From the sequence record PV340851.1: a stretch of DNA of 64,000 nt; one strand, written 5' to 3'. A model generated the notes under the pieces. The model worked only from the letters and a program-made list of their open reading frames with translations. It was not told the origin of the DNA and did no database searches. The translations under genes and the position numbers were made by a program. Positions 27,374 to 48,086 of the stretch are shown one piece after another. Within the stretch, counting starts at the first letter, position 1, and each line of letters begins with the position of its first letter.

Positions 27374-27552
27374 TCAAAGTTCAAGGACACGACAATTTAT
27401 ATCGAGATCCTAATACTGGAGCGATTATTAATAAACAAACTCCACCTTCCAAAGTATTATCATCTGCTGTTAAGGACATAAATAATCTGAAGGAAGAACT
27501 ATATGAAATTAAACAACTCTTAAAAGAGATAGTACGAAATGGCAATTCTTAG
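27370..27552 (+). CDS. Small virion-associated protein (60 aa)
   Basis: KV.GH..LYRD..TGAIIN plus a C-terminal coiled coil; ATGA overlap; typical follower of the DUF4815 gene. Confidence 0.8.
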   Translation: MIKVQGHDNLYRDPNTGAIINKQTPPSKVLSSAVKDINNLKEELYEIKQLLKEIVRNGNS

Positions 27553-31978: not shown

Positions 31979-34900
31979 ATGAGTTTTAACATTAATTCTG
32001 ATAAAGAATTTATCTCAGGGTCAAAACCTCAATTTATTGGTACAACTCAGTTCTCTATTCGCGCTGGTGGCGGTGTGGATGAGAAAGAAGTAGTTAGAGC
32101 ACTTCTCGATTCGGAGGAGAAACTACCTCGTGTTGGTATTAATAGAACGGGACAAAGGGTCAACAACATCAATGTGTTGACTAGTGGTTCTGGATACACC
32201 ACGGAGCCTACAGTTACCGTCAGTCCTCCCCCTGATAGTCCTACTGCCGTACAGGCACTAGCATCTGCTTTTATTTTCAATGGTCGCGTTGTTAGCATTG
32301 CTATCAATAATCCTGGTGCTGGTTATTCTACTGCACCTACTGTTACAATTACTGGTGGTAATGGTGGTGGTTGTTCTGCAGTCGCAGAACTTGATACCGT
32401 TGATTACGAACTTGACATTAACGGTGCAATTAGAACTTCTACGTCTATTATTTCCGACACGGCGAGAATTCTAAACCTGGATATCGACAACTTCGTTACT
32501 CCAGACTTAAACCTGAGAGGTCCAAACCTTAAGACTTATGTTAATAACTCAGGTACTATCTGGGTTGCTAATACTATTGTCCAAGAGAACTCCTATAGAT
32601 ACTTCGGTGCCAATGTCTACCAGGCATTGAACGCTGGTCAGACTGGTCCTGCTGCTCCTGAGCACCTGGATGGTATTGTCCTTAACGGCGAAGTCAACTT
32701 CAAGCACATTGGTTTCCGAGTCAATGATGAAAATGCATTTAAGTATGGTGAAACTGGCGAAGCAGGTATCTACCCACGTTCTATCACACCTCTACTAGGT
32801 GATAGATCTGACAAGATTGCAACTACAGAATACGTCCTCAACCTAGCAACGAATGACGTTGGTGGTCGTATCTACGTTTCCTCGCAGATTGGTAATGACC
32901 TAAACGATGGTCGATCTGCAGTCAACCCAGTTAGATCTGTCAAGAAAGCAGCACAATTGGCATGGGCAACGCCTGGTGTCAAAGAAACTATTATCATCTC
33001 TGGTGGTGACTACGTAGAAGATAACCCAATCTCTTTGCCACCTGATGCATCGGTTGTTGGTGATAACCTACGTCTAGTAATCATCAGACCTAACAACCCT
33101 GGCAAGCACATCTTTAAGTTCGGTGATAAGAACTACGTTACTGGTGTTACTTACCGAGATAAAATTGATGCTAACGGTGACGCTATTGCGACGTGGGACT
33201 TCGCAATGGTATTCGACGATAAGCAGCGTATCATCGTCGATTCTGAAGTCAATGGCGACTTCGGTGTCAACTTCCCAATTGGTCACCAAGTATTTGGTCC
33301 TGACAAATTTAGAATTAATGGATTCCAGAACAACACTGGTCTGTCAGCACTTGTCTCTGGACTAGAAGCAGTTGGTGTTAACACTGGTGCTAGAGGTATT
33401 ATTTCCAACGTTATCTTTACTGAGACATCAGGAAACAATGCATATCAAAATGGTTCTCTAGACATTGTTATTACCAGTGGTTCTTTCCTGGAAGGTGAAG
33501 GATTCAGATATATTATTTCTGGTAATGTAGGATCATCTGTTGGTAGTTCTACGGGAACTGTTGGAATTAATCAGATTGCCATTACTTCAGATCCAACACC
33601 ACTAGGTCTGATTGTTAGTTCTTATATCTACCTGGATGGTGTATCCAACTCCCAGGTATCAACTGGATTCTATGAAATCATTCAGATTGATGATGACAAT
33701 GCTCCTACCCAATGGGAACTTACCCTTGCTCCAATTCTAAATGCTACTGGATGGAGAGAGACTGAATCTGGAACTATCAATATCAGTAGTGCATCTATTA
33801 CTGAAGGTCAGTTTGACTCCACAAAGATCAACTCGATCCGAGCAGAAGGTGAAGTTGTATTTGAAGATGCAGACTTCGATACTTCTCTGCCTATTATTAG
33901 AATGGATTTCTCCAAGCAAGGAGATCCTTCTATTGCACAAGATGGTTTCCAGTCTGATATCTTTGGTAACGCAGAAGATCCAGGTGGTGTCATTCTGTAT
34001 ACCAGTGCTCTTGCTGGTAGACAAAACTTCCACGACTTCAAAGAAGGTCAAGAAATTCTAATTGAGGGTCTACCAACTGTATCTCCTGATCTGTCGTTCA
34101 TGAACGGCAGACAAAGGATTTATAAGGTTCTAGAAGATGCTGATGGTCGTGCAAGACGTTTCGTCATTCCCAAAAAAGTTCCTGCTAGTTTAGGACTTAA
34201 TGCTAACGATAACTTTGATCCTGGTCAGTTTGCAACTGTCAAATCTGCATCCAGATCGGTTACGTTCTCTCTGCTGAACTCTCCCAACAAATTCCCATTA
34301 TCTCAGCCTGTTGATAGAAGATTCCAGGACGCATGTACATTCATCCGTAACAACAGAGACTTCATCGCAGATGAAGTTGTAGGAAGAATCAACCGAGAGT
34401 TTGCTCAAGACTATCATTCTGTATATGAAATTGGTGGTCAGTCTTCTGCTTCCTATACGGCAACAGATGCTACCTATGATCCTAGCACTGGTGAGTTTGA
34501 AATCACCATTCCTACTCATGGTTTATCGGTTGGCGAAGGTATCAGAATTGCTGATGATTCTTTCGTGTTCACTTGTGCCATGGATGGTAACAAGACTGAA
34601 CACGCACTACCAGAAGCAGGTCAGTATGCTAGTGGCAAGTCTCTGCCTATCATATCAACCACTACAAATACTGTTACGGTCAACGTAGGTGCATCTGGTC
34701 CTAATGAGTTCTTCACACCTTCTAATGCTACCTACGATCCTACACTAGGTACACTACAATTAATTATTGGTGCTCATACACTATCACCTGGGGAAGGTGT
34801 TGTCATCGACGACAACTCTCTGTCCTTTAAGTGTGCAATGGATGGATATGATTCTACTAAAACATATCCACGCCCTAACATTGATCCATTTGCTGGTAGA

Positions 34901-37900
34901 TCTATTCCTATTCAGTCTGTTACAGCAGACTCTATTACTCTACAAGTTGGTATCTCCAGAGAGAATTTCTCCCTGACACCTACTACTGGCACGACATATG
35001 ATGCTGCAACTGGCGATCTGGTAATGAACGTTGGTCAGCATGGTCTTGGTGTTGGTCGTAATGTTGTTCTTAATGATAACTCTTTCACCTTTACGTGTGA
35101 TATAGATGGCAACGTTTCCCAGCACACCTATCCACGTCCTGGTACTGATCCATATGCTGGTAAGTCCATTGAGATTACAAATGTTGGATTTACTGAGCAT
35201 ACTCCTACCAACGTATCTTATAATGCTGCCACTGGCGTAGTTGAATTCACGATCAATAGTCATGGATTCAACAACGGCGACTATATTATGGTCGCTGATG
35301 GATCTCTGGTATTTACCTGCGATCTCGATGGTAACGTTGCACAGAAAGCATATCCCCGCGCTGGATATGATCTACCATCTAATCGTTGGATGGAAGTTTC
35401 TATTGTTAGTGGTGATGTATTCAGCATTAACGTTGGTCCTTCCTCTTACACAGGTACTCACACCTGGATCTCTGCCGCTTCTAATGCAATTAAGAGGCAA
35501 GATGGATATCTCACAATCAACGTTGGAAACGCTGGTTCTGCTGCTGGTTCTAACCACACATTTGTGGCTGCTACCAGTGGTGCTGTTAAGCATGAACCAA
35601 GATCGAATCACCTATTCCAAGGAGCAACTACAAACGCGGTTCGCCACCTTCCTCAGTCTGCTCATACTTATGTAAGATCCACATCTGGTGGTATTACTAC
35701 TGGTGGTTCTTCATTCAAGATCTATCTGGGTCAAACAGAGCATGAGCATACCTACGTAAGCGGTGGTACTGTCACCTTCGGTGGTTCTGACTACACGATG
35801 ACTAATTTTGAGTATGACGCTCTGGTAAGTGGTGTCGCCACTGTCACTACAACGAATTCTATCCCAGGTCTTGCTGAAGATGATATCGTAAAACTTGCTG
35901 ATATTCTAATCAGTTGTGAAGCTGGTCAAAAGGTTTATCCCTCTTATAGTTCACCTACTTCTGGTGGTAATGCTCTAGTAAGTAATGGCGATGAGCAATG
36001 TAAGCAAGACCTTGTTCACTTCATGAATGCTGTCATTCGTGACTTGGAATATGGCACTAACCATAATGTCATCGATGCTGCCAATAAGTATATTGTCAAT
36101 GAAAAGATTACATACATTGAAGATGAAATTGTACAGAACATGCGTGCTATTGAATATGCACGTCAACTTCTAATCTTTGCTGTTTGTAACTGGAGAACTG
36201 AAGACAGAACACCTGGAGATCCTATCTATGTTCCTCAGTATTCTTCTCTACCAAGATACTTTGACGACACTGTTATCACAGCAACAGCAGGTACTCCTGC
36301 TTGTGCTAACGTCGTATCTGCAATTGATGTTCTATCCTTCCTATGGGTAGATGTTATTACTAACAATGCATCTGGCACTCTACTGGATGCAGCATATCTG
36401 ATTATGCGTAACGCTGATCTAATTGCTGATCAGGCATTGATCGATACCAAACAACAGTATCCTACACTCAACCTTTCCGATATTATGGAAAGGAAGTGTA
36501 AGCGTGACATTAAGATTGTTCTAGAAGGTCTAGCAAAAGACCTTTGCTTGGGTGGTAACTCTGGTATCGTTGCTGTCGCTGAGTCTTACTTCTCTGGCAC
36601 TGCACTGACTGCAATTTCTGAAGCACAGAGACAAGAAACAATCTACGCTTACCAGAGAGTTCAGCAGCATGCTATTGCTGCTATGAGAAACTGGACTGGT
36701 GGTAATGTCATCGACCTTACTCCTTCTAGTGCTCAGTACAACTCCACGACAGGTCAACTTACTGTTACCTTCCCCGATCCACTTCTTCCTATTACTACAA
36801 ACGATAGAATTGCATTCAAGGAAGAGGCACTTACTTTCAACTGCTCATTCGGTAGCGGTGGCGATCATGCTAACCCACGCCCTGGTGATGCAAACTATGG
36901 CAAGTCGCAAGCAATCACTGGTGTAACATCTTCTGGTGGGGCAACTACCGTTACTACTAACGTAGGTGATGCTGGCGCTGCTGCTGGTCTTGTCCATACT
37001 CTCACTGCTGCTCTAACAGATGGTACGATCATTATCTATGATCCTATCGAAACTACCTCTGCTATTCCACAGTATGAAGATTGGAACATCCTTATTGATG
37101 TTAACGGTACTGCATCTTCTATTCAGGTTACTCCAACAGGTGCTACTTACAACCCTGCTAATGGTGTATTTGTTGTCACTGCAAACGGACACGGTGCATC
37201 TGTAGGTGATCAAGTTGCTTTTGATGCTGAGTCTTTCGTGTTCACTTGTGCCATGGATGGTAACAAGACTGAGCATGCTCTACCAGGACCAGGACAACCT
37301 GCATACAACAACCTCATCACTATTGATGCTGCTGACGCAAATACATTCACATTGAATGTCGGTGCATCTGGTCCCGATGTACAGTTCACACCAACTGGCA
37401 TTACCTATGATCCAGCAACTGGTGATATGGTCATGGAGATTGGACCACACTCCTTGTCTGTAGGCGAAGGTATTGTCATTGATGACAACTCATTGACGTT
37501 CACCTGTGCAATGGATGATAATCAATCCCAGAAGACGTACCCACGTCCTGGTATTGATCCATTTGCTGGGCGCTCTATGCTTATCACCAGCACCTCTGCA
37601 ACGACGATTACTGTCGATGCAGGCAAGTCTGGTCCTAACAAGTATTTTACACCTACTAACGCCACATATAACCCATCTACGGGCGACATGGTTCTGACTG
37701 TTGGTCAGCATGGTCTAGGTGTTGGACGCAACGTAACACTTGCAAACAACTCCTTCACCTTTACATGTGCTGCTGATGGCAACGCGACTCAGCACACCTA
37801 TCCTCGTTCTGGTCAGGATCCATTTGCAGATAACAAGTCTATCGCAATTACTGCGGTTGGTACTACATCCCATACTCCAACCAATGCTGCATATGATGCA

Positions 37901-40900
37901 TCAACTGGTATCGTTACTTTCACCTTGGCGAGTCATGGATTTGCTAACGGCGACTATATCAAGGTCGATGATGGTTCTCTAACCTACACATGTGCTCTGG
38001 ATGGCAATACTGTTCAGAAGTCTTACCCCCGTGCTGGATATGATTATCCATCTGGTCGCTGGTTGCAGATTTCTGGTGTAACAACCAACCAGTTTAAGAT
38101 CAACGTTGGTCCTTCTTCCTATACAGGCACTCATCTATTCGTCTCTGCTGCTGCAGACGCGATCAAACGTCAAGATGGTACATTCACCCTCAACGTTGGT
38201 ACATCGTCCGATACAAGCGCACATACCTTTGTTAGCGCAACTACGGATGCTGTGAGACATGAACCACAATCTGCTCATACATTCATCTCTGCAACGACAG
38301 ATGCAGTTAAGCATCTTCCACAGTCTGCTCATACATTCGTAAGAGCATCTCAAAATGCAATTGAAGTATATCCCCCAGGATCTGCTCCTCTGTGTGCTAG
38401 CGTCGCTTCTACGATTGCTACATCGATGAATCTGTTTGAATCTATCCTTGATGGTACTATTCAAGCAGGTGCAACTACCGTAACATATGGTACTTTGTAT
38501 GATACGTCGAATGTTATCACATATCCTGATTCTTACATCACTGATCAAAATGATGTAAGGATGGCAATCCGTGCTGATTACGATGACTATCCAATTATTG
38601 AGGCATCTCCATATACACAGAACGCATCTGTTATCTCCTTCCTAGGTGGTGGCGGTGCTGAAGTTGATGGTGACAAAGTTAAGCAACCTAACTGTCCTTT
38701 CCCTGGTCTTGAGATCGACGGAACGGCATCCTTCCCCAACCAGGGTAAGTCGATGGTTGCTGCAGCATTCACGATCGTCTCCTTCGGTGGTACAGGTTAC
38801 AAGATCGTCAACGATGGTTACACCCAGTTGGTTTCGGTCTTCGTTATCTTCTGTGCTGACGGTGTACTTTCTGAGTCTGGTGGTTATGCATCTATCACCA
38901 ACTCTGCTACCAACTTCGGTATCTATGCTCTGAGAGCAACTGGTTTCCGCAGAGATCCATACGTCTTTGACGCAGGTTACTTTGCTGGTTCTACATACGT
39001 TCGTGCAACAATCACTAACGTATCTCAGACACCTACAGGTAGAACAATCTTTACGATTGAGAACCTAGGTCGTGAACCACTGGAGCACTACATCCTCAAG
39101 ATTGATGGTCATACTAACTCCGATCCTGATACAGAATACTTCATTGATGAAGTTACTCAGGTCGGTGCTGGTCCACCATTTACCGCTACATGTATCTTTG
39201 ATGATGGTTCTGGTGGATCTGTCAGTGTCATTGATGACAGCAATGGACAAGCAGTTACACCTGCAAACCTAGATGGTGCATATGTTGGTCTACATAGACC
39301 TTCTATTGTTAACTCCTCCTCCCACACCTGGGAATTCGCAGGTTCGGGTACTAACTACCTAGCACTACCCGAGAACGGTGGTACTAAGGTTGAAGCAAAC
39401 GAACAGTTCAACGAAAACTACGGTCGTGTATACGTCTCTGGTACTGACGAACTGGGTGACTTCAAGGTTGGTACGTTCGCTAAGATCGAAAACAGAACTG
39501 GTGCTATTACCTTCACGGGTACGGTTACCATCTCGGAAGTTGAATTCTTGAAACTGAAAGGTGGCGACGTTGTTGTCACAGGTTTCGATGACTCTAACAC
39601 ACTGGGTGGTGCTAACTCTAGTAACAGTAAGATCCCAACTCAGAAGGCAGTTAGAGACTTCATCACCAACAACCTTGGTGCATACATCCAGAAGGAATAC
39701 TCAACCAACTCTGTTCCTAGAGCACTGGTCGAACTGACTGATTCTGGTAAGATCTCTCTCGATCAGATCCCTGCTCTGCGTCCTTTCCAGGTCTTTACAA
39801 TTCCCGATCAAGCAGCAAGACTTTCTATCGAAGGCGCACTCGCTGGTGACATCGCGATCCAACAGGACAATAACACTTCCTTCATTCTGAATAACGATAA
39901 CGGTAGTCAGTTCTTGGCATTCACCGTTGATCCAAGTCTGTCGTTCACCCTGAACGATATCTTCGAGGGTAGCGTATCTGGTGGTCAGATTCAGGCAACT
40001 GAGTACAGACAAGGTGTTCTCTATCAGATCAATATCACCGAAGCAGGTAGTGGTTATACACAACCTCCTGTTGTCACCATCTCTGGTGGTTCTCCACAGG
40101 CAGGTGCTGTTGCTGCAGTTGCAACTTGTACTATTGCTAATGGTCAAGTTGTTACGATTACCATCGAGGAACAAAACAGTTATGTTGGTGGTAAAGGTTA
40201 CACCGTTCAACCTGTTATCAACATTGCAGCGCCTCCAGGTGGTGGTACTCAAGCAGAAGCACTGGGTCTCATCGAAAGCAGACTTTATGGTAACATCGTC
40301 AACAACATCAAGATTGTTGATACTGATACATTCCAATCCAGTGATGTTCCTGCTGAGACAATCAATATTACTAGAGCGATTAACACCTCTTCCTCTAACG
40401 CTAATAATTGGGTATCCCTATCCACTACAACTGTTGATGCTAGAGACATTACTGGTGGTCCTATCGCGACTGACCTGCTGTCTACTAACTCCACAGCAGC
40501 AAACTCTAACACCTTCCTGAGAGGTGACCAATCTTATGCACTGGCAGTTCAGTCCCTGAAGGGTCCTGAAGAAAGATACTTTGCAAAACTGAGTGTTCCT
40601 GCTCAGTCTGGTGGTATCACAATGATCTTCGCTAGCAACCAGAACGCACTGAAAGGTCATATTATCAGAAACACTGTCACGGGTGTTCAGGAAGATACAA
40701 TTATTACCTCTGTTATCACAGAGAACAACTTGACTACGATTTCTTTCTCTCAAGAGAAAGCACTCACAGCAACCATTCCTACTGGAACTATTATCGAGTT
40801 CCAGAGACCACCTTCACCAATTAAATTTGACTCTACGTTTACCCAAGGTAACTTCGTTGAGGAAGTCATTATTGCTAACGGTGGTAGTGGATTTACCAAC

Positions 40901-43684
40901 GGTACATACTACAACCAAACTGTAACTGGTGGTAGTGGTACAGGATTCAAGGTAACATACATTGTTGCAAACAACAGCATCACTGAGGTCATTATTACCA
41001 CTGGTGGTGCTGGTTACACAACTGATTTCCAGGTCAACACTGCTCCGACTGAACTTGGTAGTGGTACTGGACTAGACCTCAGATGTAAGATCTCTACCAT
41101 CAACAGACAGTATGCAAACGTTACTGTTGATATCGACAGAGTTGTCTCTGCATCTCTCGACCCTGAGTATGGTACTACTGGTGTTGCTAGATTTGATAAG
41201 AATCAGTTCTTCATCGGTGATGCAGGTGACGGTTCTATCAGACTGAAGACCGCATCTAACAGCATCGACTCTGGTCTTGATGCTGACCTTCTGGATGGCA
41301 AGCAAGGTTCCTTCTACCAGAACGCTGGTAGTTTGTCTGCTGGTACACTGGACTCCGACAGATTGTCTGGTACATACAACATTGACATCTCTGGTCAGTC
41401 CCAGAAATGTATCAGATTGCTCACTGGTACTAACAACCCATCCTCTAACCCATCACCAAACACCTTCTCCGAAGGTATTATTTGTAACACCAAGAACAAC
41501 AATGCTGACCAGCTCCTAGACGGCGGCACCAAGCACATGGTGATGACGCTAAGACCTGGACCTGATGCTACCTTCGGTGGTATCAGACAGTTGGCATTTA
41601 CCGACAACGACAACATGTGGTTGCGTGGTTCTGGTACTGGTGTTACTACATTCGGTACATGGGCACAGATCTGGACATCCGAGAACGATGGTATTGACAC
41701 TGGACTAGATGCTGACAAACTGGATAACAGAGAAGGCACTTGGTATCAGAATGCTCTAAACATCAACTTCGGTACTATCTCTGCTAACAGACTGCCATCC
41801 TTCATGAAGGCATCTGGTTTCAGAAACACACTGAAGGTTAAGACATTCAACGGTGATCCTAAGTACAGAATCTATGTTTCTGGTAAGGTTCTAACTGCGT
41901 TCCCTGCTCCTAACCCATTCACTCCTGGTAACACTGTCAACCTGTACAACGCACAGTCTCAGGCAACAGGTACGATTGAGATCGATAATATCATTACAAA
42001 TGATGATCTAAATGATGACAGAAATGACTACTCGATTCTCATTGGTAGACTGACTAATGGTAACTTCCAGAACGCTGTTACGATTGGTACTGCTGCTCTA
42101 CCTGTTATCTTCCATGACTTTACTATTGAGGATGACAACGTTATCGATATCGTCACGATGGAAAGTGATGGTGGCACCGCTAACATTAAACTTGGTAGAA
42201 AGGACGGTGTAGCATCCAACCCTGGTATCTACTTCAGTTCTTCTCAGTTGGTTGCTAACTACAACTCTTCGATTGTTGCAACTGGTGGTAACGCAACTGA
42301 TGGTTCTGGTACACTGAACGCACAAGTTGCTGATGCTAATGGATTTAGCGTCAATGGCAACATCGTCTGGAACGAAGGTAACGTTCAGTTCAACTCTACT
42401 AACGTCCTGGGTACTGCAGTCATTCGTGACGCTACTGGATCTTTTGAAGCACATCGCATTACATTGGTTGCAGATGTTAACGGCATCGAAGGTGAACTGA
42501 TTGGTAAGGCATCTAAGAACGTACTGAAAGAAGGCGATACCATGACTGGTACGCTGAACATCAGTGGTGCTCAATCTAACTTCTCTGTACAAGGAACCTC
42601 TGGTTTCACAGGTAACGTCGTAATGTCGAATGACCTGACAGTTGCAACTGACGTTCTATTCGTTGATGCTTCTGACGAAGAGGTTGGCATCGGCACCACA
42701 AATCCACTGGACAAACTGTCCGTGATCGGAGGTGCATTTGTTATTAACTCTGGCAATTCTGGTAACAGCATCTCGACACCAAATGCACTAGGCATCACAT
42801 ATGATTCCAGTGCTGCTCGCGGTCACATTATCGTTGATCATCAATCTGCTTCTACATCTCTTGACTTCGAGACCTCTAATAGTGGTACTCTAAGTTCCAA
42901 GATGAGATTGGATAATGTTGGTCATGTCTTCCCATTATCTTCTACACAGGATCTTGGTAAGGATAGCACCAACGAAAGATGGAGAAATCTATACGCGAAG
43001 AACGTATATGCCGACGAGAAACTAACTATTGAAGATGCAGCATCTAATGCTGGTGCTCCTGCATACTTCCTAGGTGCATCTGGTTTCCGTAACTTCCGTC
43101 TTGGTAACCAACTGCTTGCAGATGACACATTTGAAATTACAGCAAGCACTGCAAATGGTGGTCAGGTCTGGGGTTCTACTCCTGCTCTGTTTATCCAAGG
43201 TGCTACAAACAGAATTGCAATAAATACTACTAACTTCAGTGGTACTGATACATCTGGCGCATCTCCAGTTGTTAGAGATTATCAACTGAACATCGAAGGT
43301 GACCTTAACTTCAACGGTCAACTCTTCCAGAACAACGAAGAATTCGTTACTTCTAGATGGACACTGAACAAGACTACCAACAATATCTGGAGAATTTCTA
43401 GAGTTGGTATTAACCAGGCAAACCCAGATTATCAACTGGATGTCAACGGCAGTCTCAATGTTCGTGGTTCTACATTCGTTTCTGGATCTAACACTGACGT
43501 AATAAGTGTTAACGGTGATGTCCAATATGTTGATTCCTACGGCGTCTTCAAGACAAATCGCAACACAGTTAACGAAAACGTTACTATTCCTGCTGCTACA
43601 AACGCAGTAAGCGCAGGTCCTTTGACTATAAATAATGGTGTAACAATTACCATTGCAAACGGTAGCTCCTGGAGTGTCGTATAA
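31979..43684 (+). CDS. Giant tail fibre/tailspike-like protein (3901 aa)
   Basis: Split beta-helix (YVSSQIGNDLNDGRSAVNP...; SPYTQNAS...), about 10 YD..TG..HG..FTC..DG..YPR repeats, DADLLDG/DADKLDN motifs, and a C-terminal NENVTIP...SAGPLTINNGVTITI..GSSWSVV typical of marine phage fibres. Confidence 0.85.
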   Translation: MSFNINSDKEFISGSKPQFIGTTQFSIRAGGGVDEKEVVRALLDSEEKLPRVGINRTGQRVNNINVLTSGSGYTTEPTVTVSPPPDSPTAVQALASAFIFNGRVVSIAINNPGAGYSTAPTVTITGGNGGGCSAVAELDTVDYELDINGAIRTSTSIISDTARILNLDIDNFVTPDLNLRGPNLKTYVNNSGTIWVANTIVQENSYRYFGANVYQALNAGQTGPAAPEHLDGIVLNGEVNFKHIGFRVNDENAFKYGETGEAGIYPRSITPLLGDRSDKIATTEYVLNLATNDVGGRIYVSSQIGNDLNDGRSAVNPVRSVKKAAQLAWATPGVKETIIISGGDYVEDNPISLPPDASVVGDNLRLVIIRPNNPGKHIFKFGDKNYVTGVTYRDKIDANGDAIATWDFAMVFDDKQRIIVDSEVNGDFGVNFPIGHQVFGPDKFRINGFQNNTGLSALVSGLEAVGVNTGARGIISNVIFTETSGNNAYQNGSLDIVITSGSFLEGEGFRYIISGNVGSSVGSSTGTVGINQIAITSDPTPLGLIVSSYIYLDGVSNSQVSTGFYEIIQIDDDNAPTQWELTLAPILNATGWRETESGTINISSASITEGQFDSTKINSIRAEGEVVFEDADFDTSLPIIRMDFSKQGDPSIAQDGFQSDIFGNAEDPGGVILYTSALAGRQNFHDFKEGQEILIEGLPTVSPDLSFMNGRQRIYKVLEDADGRARRFVIPKKVPASLGLNANDNFDPGQFATVKSASRSVTFSLLNSPNKFPLSQPVDRRFQDACTFIRNNRDFIADEVVGRINREFAQDYHSVYEIGGQSSASYTATDATYDPSTGEFEITIPTHGLSVGEGIRIADDSFVFTCAMDGNKTEHALPEAGQYASGKSLPIISTTTNTVTVNVGASGPNEFFTPSNATYDPTLGTLQLIIGAHTLSPGEGVVIDDNSLSFKCAMDGYDSTKTYPRPNIDPFAGRSIPIQSVTADSITLQVGISRENFSLTPTTGTTYDAATGDLVMNVGQHGLGVGRNVVLNDNSFTFTCDIDGNVSQHTYPRPGTDPYAGKSIEITNVGFTEHTPTNVSYNAATGVVEFTINSHGFNNGDYIMVADGSLVFTCDLDGNVAQKAYPRAGYDLPSNRWMEVSIVSGDVFSINVGPSSYTGTHTWISAASNAIKRQDGYLTINVGNAGSAAGSNHTFVAATSGAVKHEPRSNHLFQGATTNAVRHLPQSAHTYVRSTSGGITTGGSSFKIYLGQTEHEHTYVSGGTVTFGGSDYTMTNFEYDALVSGVATVTTTNSIPGLAEDDIVKLADILISCEAGQKVYPSYSSPTSGGNALVSNGDEQCKQDLVHFMNAVIRDLEYGTNHNVIDAANKYIVNEKITYIEDEIVQNMRAIEYARQLLIFAVCNWRTEDRTPGDPIYVPQYSSLPRYFDDTVITATAGTPACANVVSAIDVLSFLWVDVITNNASGTLLDAAYLIMRNADLIADQALIDTKQQYPTLNLSDIMERKCKRDIKIVLEGLAKDLCLGGNSGIVAVAESYFSGTALTAISEAQRQETIYAYQRVQQHAIAAMRNWTGGNVIDLTPSSAQYNSTTGQLTVTFPDPLLPITTNDRIAFKEEALTFNCSFGSGGDHANPRPGDANYGKSQAITGVTSSGGATTVTTNVGDAGAAAGLVHTLTAALTDGTIIIYDPIETTSAIPQYEDWNILIDVNGTASSIQVTPTGATYNPANGVFVVTANGHGASVGDQVAFDAESFVFTCAMDGNKTEHALPGPGQPAYNNLITIDAADANTFTLNVGASGPDVQFTPTGITYDPATGDMVMEIGPHSLSVGEGIVIDDNSLTFTCAMDDNQSQKTYPRPGIDPFAGRSMLITSTSATTITVDAGKSGPNKYFTPTNATYNPSTGDMVLTVGQHGLGVGRNVTLANNSFTFTCAADGNATQHTYPRSGQDPFADNKSIAITAVGTTSHTPTNAAYDASTGIVTFTLASHGFANGDYIKVDDGSLTYTCALDGNTVQKSYPRAGYDYPSGRWLQISGVTTNQFKINVGPSSYTGTHLFVSAAADAIKRQDGTFTLNVGTSSDTSAHTFVSATTDAVRHEPQSAHTFISATTDAVKHLPQSAHTFVRASQNAIEVYPPGSAPLCASVASTIATSMNLFESILDGTIQAGATTVTYGTLYDTSNVITYPDSYITDQNDVRMAIRADYDDYPIIEASPYTQNASVISFLGGGGAEVDGDKVKQPNCPFPGLEIDGTASFPNQGKSMVAAAFTIVSFGGTGYKIVNDGYTQLVSVFVIFCADGVLSESGGYASITNSATNFGIYALRATGFRRDPYVFDAGYFAGSTYVRATITNVSQTPTGRTIFTIENLGREPLEHYILKIDGHTNSDPDTEYFIDEVTQVGAGPPFTATCIFDDGSGGSVSVIDDSNGQAVTPANLDGAYVGLHRPSIVNSSSHTWEFAGSGTNYLALPENGGTKVEANEQFNENYGRVYVSGTDELGDFKVGTFAKIENRTGAITFTGTVTISEVEFLKLKGGDVVVTGFDDSNTLGGANSSNSKIPTQKAVRDFITNNLGAYIQKEYSTNSVPRALVELTDSGKISLDQIPALRPFQVFTIPDQAARLSIEGALAGDIAIQQDNNTSFILNNDNGSQFLAFTVDPSLSFTLNDIFEGSVSGGQIQATEYRQGVLYQINITEAGSGYTQPPVVTISGGSPQAGAVAAVATCTIANGQVVTITIEEQNSYVGGKGYTVQPVINIAAPPGGGTQAEALGLIESRLYGNIVNNIKIVDTDTFQSSDVPAETINITRAINTSSSNANNWVSLSTTTVDARDITGGPIATDLLSTNSTAANSNTFLRGDQSYALAVQSLKGPEERYFAKLSVPAQSGGITMIFASNQNALKGHIIRNTVTGVQEDTIITSVITENNLTTISFSQEKALTATIPTGTIIEFQRPPSPIKFDSTFTQGNFVEEVIIANGGSGFTNGTYYNQTVTGGSGTGFKVTYIVANNSITEVIITTGGAGYTTDFQVNTAPTELGSGTGLDLRCKISTINRQYANVTVDIDRVVSASLDPEYGTTGVARFDKNQFFIGDAGDGSIRLKTASNSIDSGLDADLLDGKQGSFYQNAGSLSAGTLDSDRLSGTYNIDISGQSQKCIRLLTGTNNPSSNPSPNTFSEGIICNTKNNNADQLLDGGTKHMVMTLRPGPDATFGGIRQLAFTDNDNMWLRGSGTGVTTFGTWAQIWTSENDGIDTGLDADKLDNREGTWYQNALNINFGTISANRLPSFMKASGFRNTLKVKTFNGDPKYRIYVSGKVLTAFPAPNPFTPGNTVNLYNAQSQATGTIEIDNIITNDDLNDDRNDYSILIGRLTNGNFQNAVTIGTAALPVIFHDFTIEDDNVIDIVTMESDGGTANIKLGRKDGVASNPGIYFSSSQLVANYNSSIVATGGNATDGSGTLNAQVADANGFSVNGNIVWNEGNVQFNSTNVLGTAVIRDATGSFEAHRITLVADVNGIEGELIGKASKNVLKEGDTMTGTLNISGAQSNFSVQGTSGFTGNVVMSNDLTVATDVLFVDASDEEVGIGTTNPLDKLSVIGGAFVINSGNSGNSISTPNALGITYDSSAARGHIIVDHQSASTSLDFETSNSGTLSSKMRLDNVGHVFPLSSTQDLGKDSTNERWRNLYAKNVYADEKLTIEDAASNAGAPAYFLGASGFRNFRLGNQLLADDTFEITASTANGGQVWGSTPALFIQGATNRIAINTTNFSGTDTSGASPVVRDYQLNIEGDLNFNGQLFQNNEEFVTSRWTLNKTTNNIWRISRVGINQANPDYQLDVNGSLNVRGSTFVSGSNTDVISVNGDVQYVDSYGVFKTNRNTVNENVTIPAATNAVSAGPLTINNGVTITIANGSSWSVV
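34445..38368 (+). repeat. Duplicated block of nested about 85-aa repeats (copy A about 34445-35767, copy B about 37121-38368)
   Basis: Four repeats followed by four HT[FY]V.A...A[VI] closing strands occur twice; a perfect 41-nt repeat lies at 34559-34599 and 37232-37272. Confidence 0.85.
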
Positions 43685-44434
43685 ATGAGTAGCATATTTG
43701 TCAATACCCTCAAGTCTACGACAGGGAATACTATCCTGATCCCCGCAGGTCATTCCTTGTCACTGGATGGTACTGTCGTAACTAATAATTCTCTAGTTCC
43801 TAACCCAAATGGACAAGACGGGAAGATTCTTAGGTCCGATGGTTCATCACTAGGATGGGGAACCTCTGGTGCTAAGAATATTATTCAGTATACATCATCT
43901 GGAACTTACTTCCCATCTACAGGAACAAGACTTATTCATGTTAGAGTTGTTGGTTGTGGTGGTGGAGGTTCTGGTTATGCAGAATCTGGTGGTTCTGGTG
44001 GATATGCTGAAGGTTTCTTTAGTATGGTCGGAGTATCATCTGTTGCTATTACAGTAGGGAATGGTGGCACTGCCACATATTATTCTGGTGGTGCTGGAAC
44101 TGGTGGTTCGGTTTCCTTTGGTTCGTATATAACATGTAACGGAGGAACTGGTGCAAATAGTGCTCACCAACACTGTGGTGGTCTTGGTGGATCTTCTTCT
44201 GGTGGTACTATTAACCTCTATGGAGGAGGCGGAACTGGTCATGGTTACAATGGTAGAGGAGGTCAAAACTTCTTTGGAGGTTGTGGTACATCAGGTCACC
44301 CACAAGGCGGCGCATATGCAAACAACCATAGATCACACTCTGTTCCAGGAACAGGTGGTGTAAATGGATGGGCAAGAAGAGACCCAGGAAACGTTGGTAT
44401 TGAAGGTCAAGTAGTTATTTGGGAATATAGCTGA
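43685..44434 (+). CDS. Glycine-rich fibre-tip/adhesin-like protein, paralogue 1 (249 aa)
   Basis: MS.I.VN...S..G..I.IP.G N-terminus, VVG.GGGG, TYYSGGAG, HQHCGGL, GHPQ; directly after the fibre gene. Confidence 0.8.
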   Translation: MSSIFVNTLKSTTGNTILIPAGHSLSLDGTVVTNNSLVPNPNGQDGKILRSDGSSLGWGTSGAKNIIQYTSSGTYFPSTGTRLIHVRVVGCGGGGSGYAESGGSGGYAEGFFSMVGVSSVAITVGNGGTATYYSGGAGTGGSVSFGSYITCNGGTGANSAHQHCGGLGGSSSGGTINLYGGGGTGHGYNGRGGQNFFGGCGTSGHPQGGAYANNHRSHSVPGTGGVNGWARRDPGNVGIEGQVVIWEYS

Positions 44435-45207
44435 TGTCAATTTTAAGAGTAAACGAAATCAGATCACAATCTGGTAGTACAATCAGTGTCCCTAGTGGTT
44501 ATGAACTATCTTTGGATGGACTGATCGTTAATTCAAATTCTATTCCACCAGACCCATCTGGTCAGTCAGGTAAATTCTTACAAGCAACTAGCCAGCTTGG
44601 CGGTGGCGGATCTACTAGCTGGGTCAATGTGGGTCCAGATTCTATTAGAGTTTTTACATCAAATACCACATGGACAAAACCAGCTGGTATCACCAAAGTT
44701 CTTGTTAAGGTAGTTGGTGGTGGTGGTGCTGGTTCTGGTGTTGGTGAAAACGGTGGTGCTGGAGGTTATGCAGAAAAACTTATTGATGTCACCAGTGTAA
44801 CCTCAGTAAACGTTAATGTTGGTCAAGGATCTACATCTTCCACATATTATTCTGGTGCTGCTGGCGGTGGTTCAGCATCCTCATTCGGAAATTACATTAC
44901 TTGCACTGGGGGCAACGGCGGAAATCAAAGTCACCAGCATTGTGGTGGACTTCCTGGTAGTGGTTCTGGTGGCGACTTTAATATGTACGGCGGTGGAGGT
45001 TCTGGTCACATGTATTGGTCTGGTCCTCCAGGTGGCGGTTCTTATTGGGGCGGAGCAGGTGCTACAGGTCACCCACAAGGTGGTGACTATGCTCACCAAC
45101 ATAGTTCACATGCTCCTCCAGGAGCAGGCGGTCCCGCTGGATACCATACTTCCAGACTTGGGGCAAATGGTAGAGATGGTATGGTTGTAATTTACGAATT
45201 TAGATAA
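44434..45207 (+). CDS. Glycine-rich fibre-tip/adhesin-like protein, paralogue 2 (257 aa)
   Basis: Same motif set as paralogue 1; TGATG overlap. Confidence 0.8.
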   Translation: MSILRVNEIRSQSGSTISVPSGYELSLDGLIVNSNSIPPDPSGQSGKFLQATSQLGGGGSTSWVNVGPDSIRVFTSNTTWTKPAGITKVLVKVVGGGGAGSGVGENGGAGGYAEKLIDVTSVTSVNVNVGQGSTSSTYYSGAAGGGSASSFGNYITCTGGNGGNQSHQHCGGLPGSGSGGDFNMYGGGGSGHMYWSGPPGGGSYWGGAGATGHPQGGDYAHQHSSHAPPGAGGPAGYHTSRLGANGRDGMVVIYEFR

Positions 45208-45975
45208 ATGTCAACACTCAATGTAAACAGAATCGAGTCTTCTGATGGTACTAGTATTCTAATTCCAGCTGGATATTCTATCAGTGTTGATGGCACTGTG
45301 ATGAATAAAGATACTCTACCCCCAAGTCCATCTGGACATGAGGGTGAGTTTTTGTACAGTGATGGAACATCTTTGTCTTGGTCTGTTGCTGGTCCTAAGA
45401 GTATGCAGCAGTTTTCAGGAAGTGGCACCTGGATTAAACCAGCTGGCATCACTAAAGTTCTTGTAATGGTACAAGGAGGTGGTGGTGCTGGTTCTGGTCA
45501 TGCTGAATCTGGTGGTGCTGGAGGATATTCAGAAAAACTCATTGATGTCACCAGTGTATCTTCTGTTCAAGTAACTGTCGGTAATGGTTCTACATCTTGG
45601 ACATATTATTCTGGTGGTGCAGGTGACGGAGGAACTACATCGTTTGGTAGTTTCTGTTCTGCAAGTGGTGGTAAAGGTGCAAACACTACACACCAGCATT
45701 GTGGTGGACTTCCAGGTGTAGGATCTGGCGGAGATATAAATATCTATGGTGGTGGCGGCACAGGTCATATGTCATGGGCATGTGCGAAAGGTGGTAGTTC
45801 TTTCTTTGGTGGTGCTGGTGTATCTGGTCACCCACAAAACCAATCTAACCACATTCAGAACAATGACGACAAAGCAGGTTATGGTGCTGGCGGAACGGGT
45901 GGATATACTACATATCAAAACTCTAACGCTGGTAGAGGTAAAGGTGGCGTCGTAATTGTCTACGAATATACTTGA
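45208..45975 (+). CDS. Glycine-rich fibre-tip/adhesin-like protein, paralogue 3 (255 aa)
   Basis: Same motif set; shares a 23-nt identical tract with paralogue 2 (44932-44954 and 45691-45713). Confidence 0.8.
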   Translation: MSTLNVNRIESSDGTSILIPAGYSISVDGTVMNKDTLPPSPSGHEGEFLYSDGTSLSWSVAGPKSMQQFSGSGTWIKPAGITKVLVMVQGGGGAGSGHAESGGAGGYSEKLIDVTSVSSVQVTVGNGSTSWTYYSGGAGDGGTTSFGSFCSASGGKGANTTHQHCGGLPGVGSGGDINIYGGGGTGHMSWACAKGGSSFFGGAGVSGHPQNQSNHIQNNDDKAGYGAGGTGGYTTYQNSNAGRGKGGVVIVYEYT

Positions 45976-46005: not shown

Positions 46006-46476
46006 ATGAAAAGCGTACTAATTGACATTAGAGGTCATATCACTGACATTGTAGAACCAGGCGAAGAATTCGCTGTCTATAATGGTCCAGATGCACAATG
46101 CAAATGGGTGACTTGTCACGTTGATGAAGTTCAATCCAATTGGATACTGAGTCAAAAGACTTGGGTGGCACCTGATAAGCGTTACGAAAACGGTCAGGAC
46201 ATCAAACGTCAGATTGCATATGGTGAGATCGGAGAGCAATTGGATATGCTCTACAAAGATCAACTTAATGGCACCACAAATTGGCGCGATCATATTACTA
46301 ATGTGAAGACAACTATCGAGTCTTCTTCTACATGGGAAGCAAATCCTGCAAACAAAGAAGGTAAAACAAAGATCGTTCTACATACTGATACCAACCCTTC
46401 ATGGTTGCATCTTCCCGAGGGAGAAAATATTATCGAAAATATTCCAACTGGTATCGTATACGCGACTGAAGAATAA
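46006..46476 (+). CDS. Tail-fibre-associated protein (156 aa), possible assembly chaperone
   Basis: AYG.IGEQLDMLYKD...GT..W..HI..VK motif is common in proteins encoded next to marine phage fibres. Confidence 0.65.
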   Translation: MKSVLIDIRGHITDIVEPGEEFAVYNGPDAQCKWVTCHVDEVQSNWILSQKTWVAPDKRYENGQDIKRQIAYGEIGEQLDMLYKDQLNGTTNWRDHITNVKTTIESSSTWEANPANKEGKTKIVLHTDTNPSWLHLPEGENIIENIPTGIVYATEE

Positions 46477-46481
46477 TTGTT

Positions 46482-48086
46482 ATGAAAGTAAATTCGGTAT
46501 GCATCGTCGGGGGTGGATCCTCGGGGTGGATGACTGCTGCCTTATTGGCATACAATCTACCTGATCTGAAAATTACAGTAGTTGAACCCAAAGATATTCC
46601 AACAGTTGGTGTTGGAGAATCTACTCTTGGTCATATCAATAGATACTTAGATTGTATTGGTCTTACAGGCAGAGATGCTGAGTGGATGCCAGAGTGTGAT
46701 GCAACTTATAAAGTTTCTATTCAATTTACAGATTTTAAACACAAGGGACATCGTTTCCAGTATCCATTTGGTCAGATAGATTTTACTGACAATGCAGGTA
46801 ATGATGATTGGGATTATCTATCAAATATTTACAATGATGTAAGGTTTGATGAATTCAATAATCCAATCACATTTCTAGCAGATAATAATAGAATGACTGA
46901 TAACAATCAGGTCATTAGAAATTTTAATTTTGTAAAAGATACAGCATATCATTTTGATGCTACCAAGTTTGGCAATTATCTAAAGGAAACTATTTGTATT
47001 CCTAAAGGTGTAAAGGTTGTTAGAGATAGCGTTGTCAATGTCTTTCGCAAGACAGACGGCACCGAGAGAGTTGATTTCTTACAACTAGAGAATTCTCCAA
47101 TGCTAAAGATCGAAGCAGATCTTTTTGTTGATTGCACAGGATTTAAGTCTCTTCTCCTAGAGGAAGAGATGGGTTCTAAGTTTATTAGTTTTAATGATGT
47201 ACTACTAAATGATACTGCTCTAGCTGCACGCATTCCATTTGTAGACAAAGAGAAAGAAGTACATAACACAACAGATTGTCATGCACTATTGAATGGTTGG
47301 GTTTGGAACATTCCTCTGTGGTCCAGAATTGGAACAGGATACTGTTATTCTAGCAAGTTTACTACAGACGAAAGAGCAGAGGGAGAGTTCCGAAGACATC
47401 TAGCAAAGTCAGATCCTAAACGTGCAGAAGAAGCAGAGTTCTTTAAGATTAATATTAGACATGGCAAACGTGAGAAAGCATGGGTCAAGAATGTTGTTGG
47501 TATTGGATTGTCGTATGGATTCCTAGAACCATTGGAGTCTACTGGTCTCCTAACTACACATGAAAATGCGCTGAGACTATTAGGAACTTTAGAGAAAAGA
47601 AATGGTCTTGTAAAGAAACCTGATATTGATGGATACAATCTGGCAGTAGATCAAGATCTAGAAAGCATGAAAGGATTTGTTGCTATGCACTACTTCCTTT
47701 CCGAAAGAAAGGACTCACCTTATTGGAGATATCTAACAGAAGAAATTGACTTTCCTGAAGTCATGGACTATATTGTCAGAAGTCCTAGACTCTATCAAGA
47801 ATACGTTTTCTCTACTTCTGCTTCTAATAGTTGGGGTAGTTTAGATGGTCTTCTCTATATCGCTGCAGGCATGGGTTGTCGTCCTCTAGGGAAGACAGAA
47901 TGCAACTATAGAATCAGAAGTGGTACAGTCCAAAAAGGAGCTCTTAGAGAATCTTATCTGAAGCATATACGCTATAAAGATCAAGTTCTTAAGAAGTTAC
48001 AAAGCATGCCTACAACCTATGAATATTTGAGAGATCATGTTTATTTTCCAAAGAAAAAAACAAATTCGCTTTCACTCAATGAGTAG
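46482..48086 (+). CDS. Flavin-dependent (tryptophan-halogenase family, PrnA-like) halogenase
   Basis: GGGSSGW (GxGxxG), VGVGEST, CDATYK (catalytic Lys equivalent), WVWNIP (WxWxIP) and FLEPLESTG motifs. Confidence 0.93.
   Translation: MKVNSVCIVGGGSSGWMTAALLAYNLPDLKITVVEPKDIPTVGVGESTLGHINRYLDCIGLTGRDAEWMPECDATYKVSIQFTDFKHKGHRFQYPFGQIDFTDNAGNDDWDYLSNIYNDVRFDEFNNPITFLADNNRMTDNNQVIRNFNFVKDTAYHFDATKFGNYLKETICIPKGVKVVRDSVVNVFRKTDGTERVDFLQLENSPMLKIEADLFVDCTGFKSLLLEEEMGSKFISFNDVLLNDTALAARIPFVDKEKEVHNTTDCHALLNGWVWNIPLWSRIGTGYCYSSKFTTDERAEGEFRRHLAKSDPKRAEEAEFFKINIRHGKREKAWVKNVVGIGLSYGFLEPLESTGLLTTHENALRLLGTLEKRNGLVKKPDIDGYNLAVDQDLESMKGFVAMHYFLSERKDSPYWRYLTEEIDFPEVMDYIVRSPRLYQEYVFSTSASNSWGSLDGLLYIAAGMGCRPLGKTECNYRIRSGTVQKGALRESYLKHIRYKDQVLKKLQSMPTTYEYLRDHVYFPKKKTNSLSLNE

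What the first reader, a model, noticed from the sequence alone, without database searches (positions are those of the whole stretch)
43685..45975. Three tandem Gly-rich paralogues sharing an invariant HQHC and other His residues: a heterotrimeric, possibly metal-binding adhesin
Seen: three genes of about 250 aa, abutting or overlapping, share an N-terminal attachment-like segment, TYYSG[GA]AG, HQHCGGL, YGGGG.GH and GHPQ. They vary in the loops after these motifs (GYNGRGG, MYWSGPPGG, MSWACAKGG). Paralogues 2 and 3 share a 23-nt identical tract. Established: T-even gp38 adhesins use polyglycine-II sandwiches with hypervariable loops, and T4 gp37 binds Fe through HxH pairs contributed by three chains. 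Inference: a 1:1:1 heterotrimer or three alternative tips, with HxH/Cys forming a metal site that might mimic a metal-ligand substrate of a host uptake receptor.
Basis: partly seen in the sequence, partly recalled or inferred. Interest (0 to 1): 0.7.

Follow-up and report, generated by a model that had tools for sequence, protein, structure and literature searches.

The report
Triplicated glycine-rich cyanophage fibre-tip genes
Three neighbouring look-alike genes of a marine cyanobacterial virus encode glycine-rich tips for its giant tail fibre, the part that most likely recognises the host, and relatives usually carry this set of three plus a small helper gene, which hints that the three proteins build one mixed three-chain tip.

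Summary
The window is Synechococcus phage Sf-CH3, a T4-like cyanomyovirus. Genes at 43685-44434, 44434-45207 and 45208-45975 are paralogues (50-56% identity). They are spaced 0, -1 and 0 nt behind a 3901-aa fibre gene and share the quoted motifs.

Each has a ~68-aa N-terminal adaptor and a C-terminal TNF-like plus polyglycine domain (Pfam Gly_rich_2). That domain is homologous to the solved, homotrimeric tail fibre gp24 of cyanophage Pam3. It is not detectably related to T-even gp38 or T4 gp37.

The larger unit is new to the record: a tandem array of these genes plus a conserved ~150-aa fourth gene (46006-46476). Copy number is 3 in 30 of 38 complete environmental arrays, across three divergent subfamilies. 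Cultured relatives carry 3, 2, or 1 intact copy plus remnants.

A Glu/Tyr/Asn/His/His(/His) signature sits at the inferred distal loop turns. It is conserved in this subfamily and absent from Pam3.

A 1:1:1 heterotrimeric receptor-binding tip is my leading reading (about 0.4). Three alternative homotrimeric tips is nearly as likely. A metal site is plausible but untested. The siderophore-mimic idea has no support.

The parts
31979..43684 (+). Giant 3901-aa tail-fibre protein. Its stop codon abuts the start of gene 1. Presumed shaft that carries the tip proteins.
   Evidence: ORF. Matches phrog_5342 'tail fiber protein' over residues 2132-3901. The same giant gene precedes the triplet in S-RIM44, Sf-FR1, L004 and L024.
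43627..43634 (+). TATAAATA, a T4-type late-promoter-like octamer about 50 nt upstream of the gene 1 ATG. Weak evidence.
   Evidence: 4 copies in the window against 3.4 expected, so not above chance. Only the position is suggestive.
43685..44434 (+). Paralogue 1 (249 aa). N-terminal adaptor at aa 1-68 (43685-43888). TNF-like plus glycine-rich domain at aa 69-249 (43889-44431). HQHC at 44165-44176.
   Evidence: It is the clearest positional ortholog group.
44434..45207 (+). Paralogue 2 (257 aa). Adaptor at aa 1-73 (44434-44652). TNF-like plus glycine-rich domain at aa 74-257 (44653-45204). Signature codons: E105 at 44746-44748, H169-C170 at 44938-44943, H192 at 45007-45009, H213 at 45070-45072. 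Most variable loop at aa 193-199 (45010-45030).
   Evidence: Pfam Gly_rich_2 E 3.2e-10. AF2 model pLDDT 87.6. Foldseek to the Pam3 fibre. Column statistics.
45208..45975 (+). Paralogue 3 (255 aa). Adaptor at aa 1-68 (45208-45411). TNF-like plus glycine-rich domain at aa 69-255 (45412-45972). HQHC at 45691-45702.
   Evidence: Pfam E 1e-7; phrog_863 E 2.4e-61.
44932..44954 (+). 23-nt tract identical to 45691-45713 in gene 3. It encodes HQHCGGLP.
46006..46476 (+). Fourth gene of the module (156 aa, phrog_1787, function unknown), 30 nt after gene 3. Candidate fibre-assembly helper.
   Evidence: A homologous gene follows the array in 28 of 30 loci examined and in Syn9 gp40, P-TIM40 gp045 and S-SZBM1_47. 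AF2 model: beta-rich residues 1-55 plus helices 64-111. No significant structural or sequence match to Pam3 gp25.

Best explanation
The three genes and the 156-aa gene after them form one module that builds the distal, receptor-binding end of the phage's giant tail fibre.

Shown:
- Each of the three proteins has a short N-terminal adaptor and a C-terminal TNF-like plus polyglycine domain.
- That domain is of the kind that forms the host-recognising tip of the Pam3 cyanophage fibre.
- The domain is almost always the C-terminal end of a protein.
- Its inferred distal loops hold both the most variable segments and a conserved Glu/Tyr/Asn/His/His(/His) signature.

Inferred:
- The giant gene and the three tip genes are translated as a coupled unit in about equal amounts.
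- One chain of each kind joins through the adaptors into a 1:1:1 pseudo-threefold heterotrimer that caps the homotrimeric giant fibre.
- The fourth protein helps folding or assembly and is not kept in the virion.
- The variable loops of the three chains together make an asymmetric binding surface for a cell-envelope receptor.
- The conserved Glu/His residues hold a structural ion or fix the loop ends.

My probabilities for the separate steps:

| Step | Probability |
|---|---|
| Fibre-tip receptor-binding role | about 0.85 |
| 1:1:1 heterotrimer | about 0.4 |
| Metal site | about 0.35 |
For: Identity of the proteins:
- Pfam Gly_rich_2.
- A 68-sequence profile hits the Pam3 fibre (7yfw, 7ypx) at E 5e-6 over the whole domain.
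- The AF2 model (pLDDT 87.6) matches the Pam3 fibre best (E 1.9e-7, TM 0.55). Next come Bxb1 tail-tip chains and the ALK/LTK TNF-like/Gly-rich domain.
- At least 275 viral models match, many of them annotated tail fibres.
- The domain ends at the C-terminus in 118 of 123 representatives.
- PMC9608196 describes Pam3 gp24 as a trimeric fibre whose Gly-rich loop tips are proposed to bind the receptor.

Position:
- The genes abut a phrog_5342 giant fibre gene.
- The tip genes diverge 2.5-3 times faster than the 3' part of the giant gene in a relative that is 98.6% identical at nucleotide level.

Heterotrimer:
- 30 of 38 complete arrays (26 non-redundant) have exactly three copies. This holds in three subfamilies with different adaptors. 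Only one array exceeds three.
- The four-copy array reads 1, 1', 2, 3.
- Positional orthology holds within subfamilies.
- Spacing is 0, -1 and 0 nt.
- Three adjacent fibre genes forming a heterotrimer has precedent in virophage DSLV2 (PMC12724248) and in phage Jabs ORF60-62 (bioRxiv 10.64898/2026.07.24.740622).

Helper gene:
- It is linked to the array in 28 of 30 loci.
- It has the same gross layout and size as the Pam3 chaperone gp25.

Conserved site:
- E105, Y139 and N164 are 100% conserved. H169, H192 and H213 are 88-92% conserved across 78 copies.
- The signature is present in 1-, 2-, 3- and 4-copy arrays but absent from distant Gly_rich_2 members and from Pam3.
- The only conserved Cys in this subfamily (C170, 12/12) has no conserved partner.
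Against: - The only solved relative is a homotrimer, and its Gly-rich domains touch each other only loosely.
- Copy number is not fixed:
  - Two copies in S-WAM1, P-RSM6, S-SZBM1 and loci L030/L038.
  - One copy in L053.
  - One intact copy plus remnants in S-CREM1 and Syn9.
  - So individual copies can be lost.
- The signature also occurs in long single-gene fibres, which must be homotrimers.
- Copies cluster by subfamily before position, so an ancient fixed A-B-C arrangement is not shown.
- Virion LC-MS of S-SZBM1 found the neighbouring structural proteins 51-54 but not the two Gly-rich proteins 48 and 49.
- No multimer model, no coordinates and no metal data were available.
- The helper gene has no detectable similarity to Pam3 gp25 (E 5.7, TM 0.22).
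Confidence: 0.45

Rival explanations
1. Three alternative homotrimeric tips. Each paralogue trimerises with itself, as Pam3 gp24 does. All three compete for the same docking site on the giant fibre through their similar adaptors. A virion or a burst therefore carries a mix of tips with different receptor specificities.
For: - The solved homologue is a homotrimer.
- Most family members are single C-terminal domains of long fibres.
- Arrays with 1, 2 and 4 copies exist. Individual copies are decayed in long-cultured Syn9 and S-CREM1, as expected if a copy is dispensable on one laboratory host.
- Variable loops differ between copies.
- In P-TIM40, L008 and L035 only the middle copy carries an extra ~260-aa C-terminal domain.
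Against: - Copy number peaks sharply at three and almost never exceeds it, across three subfamilies. Free duplication of alternative tips would not predict that.
- The order is conserved and the genes are translationally coupled.
Confidence: 0.33
2. Non-virion assembly factors. The proteins are 'tail fiber assembly' chaperones, as PHROG 863 and RefSeq name them. They help the giant fibre to fold and are then released.
For: - phrog_863 is labelled 'tail fiber assembly', and RefSeq uses the same product names.
- The S-SZBM1 virion proteome lacks proteins 48 and 49.
Against: - The fold is that of the fibre itself in the Pam3 virion structure, not of its chaperone.
- The domain is the C-terminal end of many long fibres.
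- A tip present at few copies per virion is easily missed among 30 detected proteins.
- The label probably derives from the historical naming of T4 gp38. That is my inference, not tested.
Confidence: 0.07
3. The conserved His, Glu and Cys are not a metal site. They cap the ends of the polyglycine helices by hydrogen bonds, or they form a conserved pocket for a receptor sugar.
For: - His is most often replaced by Tyr, and sometimes by Arg or Trp, which keep hydrogen-bonding or stacking ability rather than metal ligation.
- Position 213 is Arg in 22 of 123 representatives.
- The first His of HxH and the Cys are not conserved family-wide.
Against: - A Glu plus two or three His that are near-invariant in an extracellular protein is typical of a metal site. 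So is a lone conserved Cys without a partner.
- Arg replacing a metal ligand next to a retained Glu is a known way to substitute for a cation. This is general knowledge and an inference here.
Confidence: 0.5

Closest known systems
Cyanophage Pam3 tail fibre gp24 with its chaperone gp25 (PDB 7YFW, 7YPX; PMC9608196, PMC9942802)
   Same: - TNF-like plus glycine-rich C-terminal domain, by sequence profile (E 5e-6) and by fold (TM 0.55).
- About 250-280 aa long, from a cyanobacterial myovirus.
- Followed by a gene of about 150-160 aa that has a beta-rich N-terminal part and a helical C-terminal part.
   Different: - Pam3 has one fibre gene and a homotrimer. Here there are three paralogues.
- Pam3 docks through an N-terminal helical bundle. 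Here the first ~68 aa are predicted to be non-helical.
- Pam3 lacks the Glu/Tyr/Asn/His/His/His signature.
- The downstream gene shows no detectable similarity to gp25.
- Here the tip follows a 3901-aa fibre gene rather than docking on the baseplate.
Tripartite heterotrimeric fibres encoded by three adjacent genes: virophage DSLV2 (PMC12724248) and Mycobacterium abscessus phage Jabs ORF60-62 (bioRxiv 10.64898/2026.07.24.740622)
   Same: - Three consecutive, co-oriented genes for similar receptor-binding proteins.
- The triplet is conserved among relatives.
- For DSLV2, an evolutionary link to Synechococcus phages and binding to Synechococcus cells are reported.
   Different: - Different folds: tail-collar PF07484 in DSLV2, a beta-sandwich in Jabs.
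- Their heterotrimers were shown by co-purification or cryo-EM. Here it is inferred from gene counts only.
   Same: Polyglycine-type lattice with variable distal loops at a fibre tip. PMC9608196 reports a weak structural likeness between Pam3 gp24 and S16 gp38.
   Different: - Not returned by sequence search, nor among the top 50 Foldseek hits in PDB or BFVD.
- gp38 is a monomer capping a gp37 trimer and has no TNF-like domain.
ALK/LTK TNF-like plus glycine-rich (TG) ectodomain
   Same: Same supradomain by fold (Foldseek E 3e-3 to 1e-2).
   Different: An animal receptor kinase ectodomain that binds a cytokine. Not trimeric, with low TM scores (~0.3).
Complement C1q globular head and heteromeric TNF-family ligands (analogy from general knowledge, not tested here)
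   Same: A jelly-roll trimer built from three paralogous chains encoded by neighbouring genes, with an ion on the trimer axis. This is what the heterotrimer-with-metal reading would resemble.
   Different: No homology was tested or claimed. Animal proteins with collagen stalks.

Membership tests
Pfam PF21722 Gly_rich_2 | Whole-protein score at or above the gathering threshold (24.3 bits) | tested here: met
   Gene 2 scores 40.8 bits and gene 3 scores 32.6 bits. Gene 1 scores 22.1 bits, just below the threshold, but is 50-51% identical to the other two.
Pam3 gp24-type fibre (TNF-like plus glycine-rich tip) | Sequence and fold similarity over the whole TNF-like/Gly-rich domain | tested here: met
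   hmmsearch E 5.4e-6 over profile positions 68-259. Foldseek E 1.9e-7, TM 0.55-0.56 over 215 columns.
Pam3 gp24-type fibre (TNF-like plus glycine-rich tip) | N-terminal alpha-helical bundle that trimerises and docks on the baseplate | tested here: not met
   The AF2 model of gene 2 has only short strands and no helix in residues 1-67, with pLDDT 61-86.
Pam3 gp24-type fibre (TNF-like plus glycine-rich tip) | Homotrimer of one gene product | not testable with these tools
   No multimer prediction or model coordinates were available. Gene counts only hint at the oligomer.
Pam3 gp24-type fibre (TNF-like plus glycine-rich tip) | Dedicated downstream chaperone of gp25 type | tested here: inconclusive
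   A conserved downstream gene of similar size and layout exists. It has no PDB sequence hit, and Foldseek to 7ypx_a gives E 5.7 and TM 0.22.
T-even gp38 adhesin (S16 gp38 type) | Detectable homology or fold match to gp38 | tested here: not met
   No gp38 chain in the PDB sequence searches. None among the top 50 Foldseek hits in PDB or BFVD.
T4 gp37 needle with HxH iron sites | Repeated HxH motifs conserved in the family, and a fold match to the gp37 tip | tested here: not met
   There is a single HxH (H167-Q-H169). The first His is Asn, Gln or another residue in the other subfamilies. No gp37 hit was returned.
Heterotrimeric fibre from three tandem paralogues (DSLV2 / Jabs type) | Three adjacent co-oriented paralogous genes, conserved as a set among relatives | tested here: met
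   Three copies in 30 of 38 complete arrays and in Sf-FR1, S-RIM44 and P-TIM40. Exceptions with 1, 2 or 4 copies exist.
Heterotrimeric fibre from three tandem paralogues (DSLV2 / Jabs type) | Physical 1:1:1 complex of the three products | not testable with these tools
   Needs a multimer model, a virion structure or quantitative proteomics.
Metal-binding fibre tip | Conserved ligand residues that lie together in space and hold an ion | tested here: inconclusive
   Conservation is shown. Placement at the distal loop turns is inferred from the Pam3 loop topology. No coordinates could be read.

The most novel reading that the evidence does not exclude
T4-like cyanophages cap a homotrimeric giant fibre with an obligate A-B-C heterotrimer of TNF-like/polyglycine domains, built by a dedicated helper protein. 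The conserved Glu/His (and in this lineage Cys) residues of the three different chains meet to hold one ion at the asymmetric receptor-binding apex. This would be a viral counterpart of the C1q head and a previously undescribed class of receptor-binding tip.
Probability: 0.2. Interest if true: 0.75.

Novelty: new variant of a known kind. Interest (0 to 1): 0.55.

Why it matters
The receptor-binding proteins of the abundant T4-like marine cyanophages are still largely unassigned. Host range in these phages shapes mortality of Synechococcus and Prochlorococcus.

This module gives concrete candidates. It is a recurrent four-gene unit at the end of the fibre gene cluster, with a solved structural relative.

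If the three chains form one mixed trimer, it would add a third and structurally different example to the heterotrimeric fibre tips reported in 2025-2026. It would also show how a symmetric fibre can end in an asymmetric binding surface.

The conserved Glu/His signature separates a large aquatic subfamily of a domain found in about 8000 protein clusters. It is a clear target for structural work.

The current database labels ('tail fiber assembly', 'hypothetical protein', 'collagen-like protein') are probably misleading.

Tried and rejected
- **PDB search with the three proteins alone** found only a chance linker match. It needed the 68-sequence profile.
- **Model coordinates** are not exposed to scripts. 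The distance between the conserved Glu, His and Cys could not be measured, and their distal placement rests on the loop topology described for Pam3.
- **No multimer prediction tool** was available. A read-through or joined construct was not attempted, because the tools forbid it.
I rebuilt it from search hits.
- **Helper gene as a Pam3 gp25 homologue:** not supported.
- **Other copies of the adaptor or the domain in the window:** none.
- **Sigma-70 promoter and terminator scans:** uninformative inside this late-gene block. TATAAATA counts were at chance.
- **Virion proteomics in the literature:** only S-SZBM1 could be checked, and it was negative for its two copies. The Syn9 proteome paper is not in the library. 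The Bxb1 paper could not be opened.
- **An ancient single triplication** was rejected as shown. The tree groups copies by subfamily first.
- **The 23-nt tract as proof of gene conversion** was rejected as unnecessary.
Full report
**Source and observation.** The window matches Synechococcus phage Sf-CH3 (PV340851.1) at 100% identity. Sf-CH3 is a T4-like cyanomyovirus isolated from the sponge Petrosia ficiformis on Synechococcus WH8102. Its closest named relative is Cyanophage S-RIM44, genus Vellamovirus.

Their products are 50-56% identical, with 94 invariant columns that include TYYSG, HQHCGGL, YGGGG.GH and GHPQ.

- The giant upstream ORF (31979-43684, 3901 aa, phrog_5342 'tail fiber protein') ends with a TAA that touches the ATG of gene 1.
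- Genes 1 and 2 overlap by one base.
- Genes 2 and 3 abut.
- A fourth gene starts 30 nt after gene 3.
- The 23-nt identical tract is real. It lies on invariant residues inside a 300-nt stretch of 75% identity, so it does not need gene conversion to explain it.

**What the proteins are.**

- All three match Pfam Gly_rich_2, with gene 1 just under threshold, and phrog_863.
- A profile of 68 relatives hits one solved protein family. This is the tail fibre gp24 of freshwater cyanophage Pam3, at E 5e-6 over the whole C-terminal 190 residues.
- An AlphaFold2 model of gene 2 (pLDDT 87.6, pTM 0.78) matches the Pam3 fibre best (E 1.9e-7, TM 0.55).
- The next best hits are two Bxb1 tail-tip chains and the TNF-like/glycine-rich ectodomains of LTK and ALK.
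- In the viral model library at least 275 proteins match. Syn9 gp38 and gp39 lead the list, and it includes annotated tail fibres of unrelated phages.
- An exhaustive profile search finds 8001 cluster representatives at E<=1e-3 and 68 at E<=1e-30.
- In 118 of 123 representatives with a full domain, the domain ends within five residues of the C-terminus.

According to PMC9608196, Pam3 gp24 is a homotrimer. It is held together mainly by an N-terminal helical bundle, and six glycine-rich hairpin loops run to a variable distal tip proposed to bind the receptor.

The three Sf-CH3 proteins are therefore fibre-tip proteins of that kind. They differ in having a ~68-aa non-helical N-terminal segment, which no other ORF in the window shares.

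**The larger unit.** The same three genes follow the giant fibre gene in S-RIM44 and Sf-FR1, and copy n there is most similar to copy n here.

I fetched 18 viral and 51 metagenomic loci and scanned them with a profile of the domain. Among arrays with enough flanking DNA:

| Copies per array | Loci |
|---|---|
| 3 | 30 (26 non-redundant at 95%) |
| 4 | 1 |
| 2 | 2 |
| 1 | 5 (four are distant family members with other architectures) |

- The triplets fall into three divergent subfamilies with proteins of about 250, 272 and 286 aa and different N-terminal segments. A fourth lineage is L011.
- In the tree, copies group by subfamily first and by position second. The triplication therefore either arose repeatedly or is homogenised within lineages.
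- Copy 1 is the clearest positional group.
- The four-copy array reads 1, 1', 2, 3.

A homologous gene of about 140-180 aa follows the array in 28 of 30 loci and in Syn9 (gp40), P-TIM40 (gp045) and S-SZBM1 (47). In the window it is 46006-46476 (phrog_1787, unknown function).

- Its model has a beta-rich first 55 residues and helices from 64 to 111. That is the layout and size reported for the Pam3 fibre chaperone gp25.
- Neither sequence nor fold search supports homology to gp25.
- A helper or chaperone role is therefore an inference from position only.

**Copy number in cultured phages.**

| Copies | Phages |
|---|---|
| 3 | Sf-CH3/Sf-FP1, Sf-FR1, S-RIM44, P-TIM40 |
| 2 | S-WAM1, P-RSM6, S-SZBM1 |
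| 1 intact plus pieces of another | S-CREM1 |
| 1 intact plus a rearranged pair | Syn9 (one fusion-like junction and one change of frame) |

Three is therefore the mode and nearly the maximum, but it is not obligatory, and single copies can decay.

**Conserved site and variable loops.** Among 43 full-length relatives, the most variable stretches are gene-2 residues 193-199, 219-229 and 237-247.

Across 78 copies from 26 triplets:
- E105, Y139 and N164 are invariant.
- H169, H192 and H213 are present in about 88-92%.

The same signature is present in the 1-, 2- and 4-copy arrays. It is absent from distant Gly_rich_2 proteins and from Pam3. In an unbiased sample of 123 representatives, about half carry E-Y-N-H-H. 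Position 213 there is His (34) or Arg (22), and some of these proteins are long single-gene fibres.

- Replacements are mostly His to Tyr and sometimes His to Arg. Arg at 169 tends to come with Tyr at 192.
- The Cys of HQHC is invariant only in the Sf-CH3 subfamily (12/12) and has no conserved partner.
- The 272-aa subfamily has other conserved Cys.
- The first His of HQH is not conserved elsewhere.

I aligned the motifs to the Pam3 loop scheme. Each signature residue then sits directly before or after a glycine-rich strand, at the turn of loops 1-5, which is the distal end. This is an inference, because model coordinates could not be read.

A structural or functional ion site is plausible. 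Hydrogen-bond capping or a conserved sugar pocket is equally possible.

**Weighing heterotrimer against alternative tips.**

For a 1:1:1 heterotrimer:
- The sharp peak and cut-off at three, in lineages that apparently reached it separately.
- The fixed order.
- The coupled translation.
- Two recent cases in which three adjacent fibre genes were shown to form a heterotrimer: DSLV2 by co-purification and Jabs ORF60-62 by cryo-EM.

Against:
- The homotrimeric solved relative.
- The existence and viability of 1- and 2-copy phages.
- Decayed copies in long-cultured isolates.
- The signature in single-gene fibres.
- The absence of any direct structural test.

One virion proteome of a two-copy relative did not detect the proteins, although it found their structural neighbours. 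This is weak evidence, given few copies per virion.

My weights are:

| Reading | Weight |
|---|---|
| Heterotrimer | about 0.4 |
| Three alternative homotrimeric tips | about 0.33 |
| Other readings | remainder |

**Novelty.** The domain, its role at fibre tips and the idea of heterotrimeric tips are all known. I did not find the following described in the searchable literature:
- The tandem array of TNF-like/polyglycine tip genes with a modal size of three.
- Its linked fourth gene.
- The Glu/Tyr/Asn/His signature.

I rate it a new variant of a known kind and moderately interesting. It names candidate receptor-binding proteins for an ecologically important phage group, and it poses a clear structural question.

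Noticed in passing
L074 (P-TIM40 gp043), L008:2739-4328, L035:4409-6001: In some triplets only the middle paralogue is about 530 aa. Its extra ~260-aa C-terminal part has a motif pattern reminiscent of fibrinogen-related lectin domains, but no Pfam family matched at E<=0.01.
   Followed up: partly
L073 (Syn9) and L080 (S-CREM1): Copies of the array are not intact in two cultured phages.
- Syn9: one intact copy plus a rearranged pair (one fusion-like junction, one change of frame).
- S-CREM1: one intact copy plus a second copy in two pieces, in an unannotated gap.
This could be real decay or a sequencing error.
   Followed up: partly
L076 (Pelagibacter phage Lederberg genes 71, 70, 69, 68) and L077 (Methylophilales phage MEP301 gp19, gp18): The helical core of the fourth-gene family (profile E about 1e-14) also occurs in small proteins of two marine podovirus-sized phages.
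- In Lederberg it follows three tandem paralogous genes of 166-183 aa (31-37% identity) that are not glycine-rich. This is a second 'three paralogues plus helper' module with a different tip fold.
- MEP301 has one such gene.
   Followed up: partly
window 46482-52553; also L002, L073, L074, L075, L078-L080: The fibre-tip module is followed in every cultured relative by tryptophan halogenase gene(s) and several 2OG-Fe(II) oxygenase or cupin genes. This tight synteny raises the untested idea that these enzymes modify fibre proteins.
   Followed up: no
L075:6282-7157 (- strand), S-SZBM1_50: A 291-aa protein with 32% glycine lies just upstream of the two-copy array. It matches neither the domain profile nor any Pfam family. 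It may be a very divergent further copy or a different glycine-rich protein.
   Followed up: partly
window 44932-44947 and 45691-45706: The codons for HQHCG form a short imperfect palindrome (5-bp stem, 6-nt loop), which the terminator scan flags on the minus strand in both genes 2 and 3. It is probably a by-product of the codons.
   Followed up: no
window 6572-16579, 19097-27373, 27539-31426: Three further very large structural ORFs (3335, 2758 and 1295 aa) precede the fibre gene, interspersed with baseplate wedge homologues (phrog_438, phrog_6005). None carries the glycine-rich domain or the adaptor.
   Followed up: partly
L022 versus window 39785-45056: A metagenomic contig is 98.6% identical at nucleotide level. 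Differences are 0.9% in the 3' part of the giant gene, 3.1% in gene 1 and 2.3% in gene 2. About half of the changed codons are non-synonymous.
   Followed up: yes
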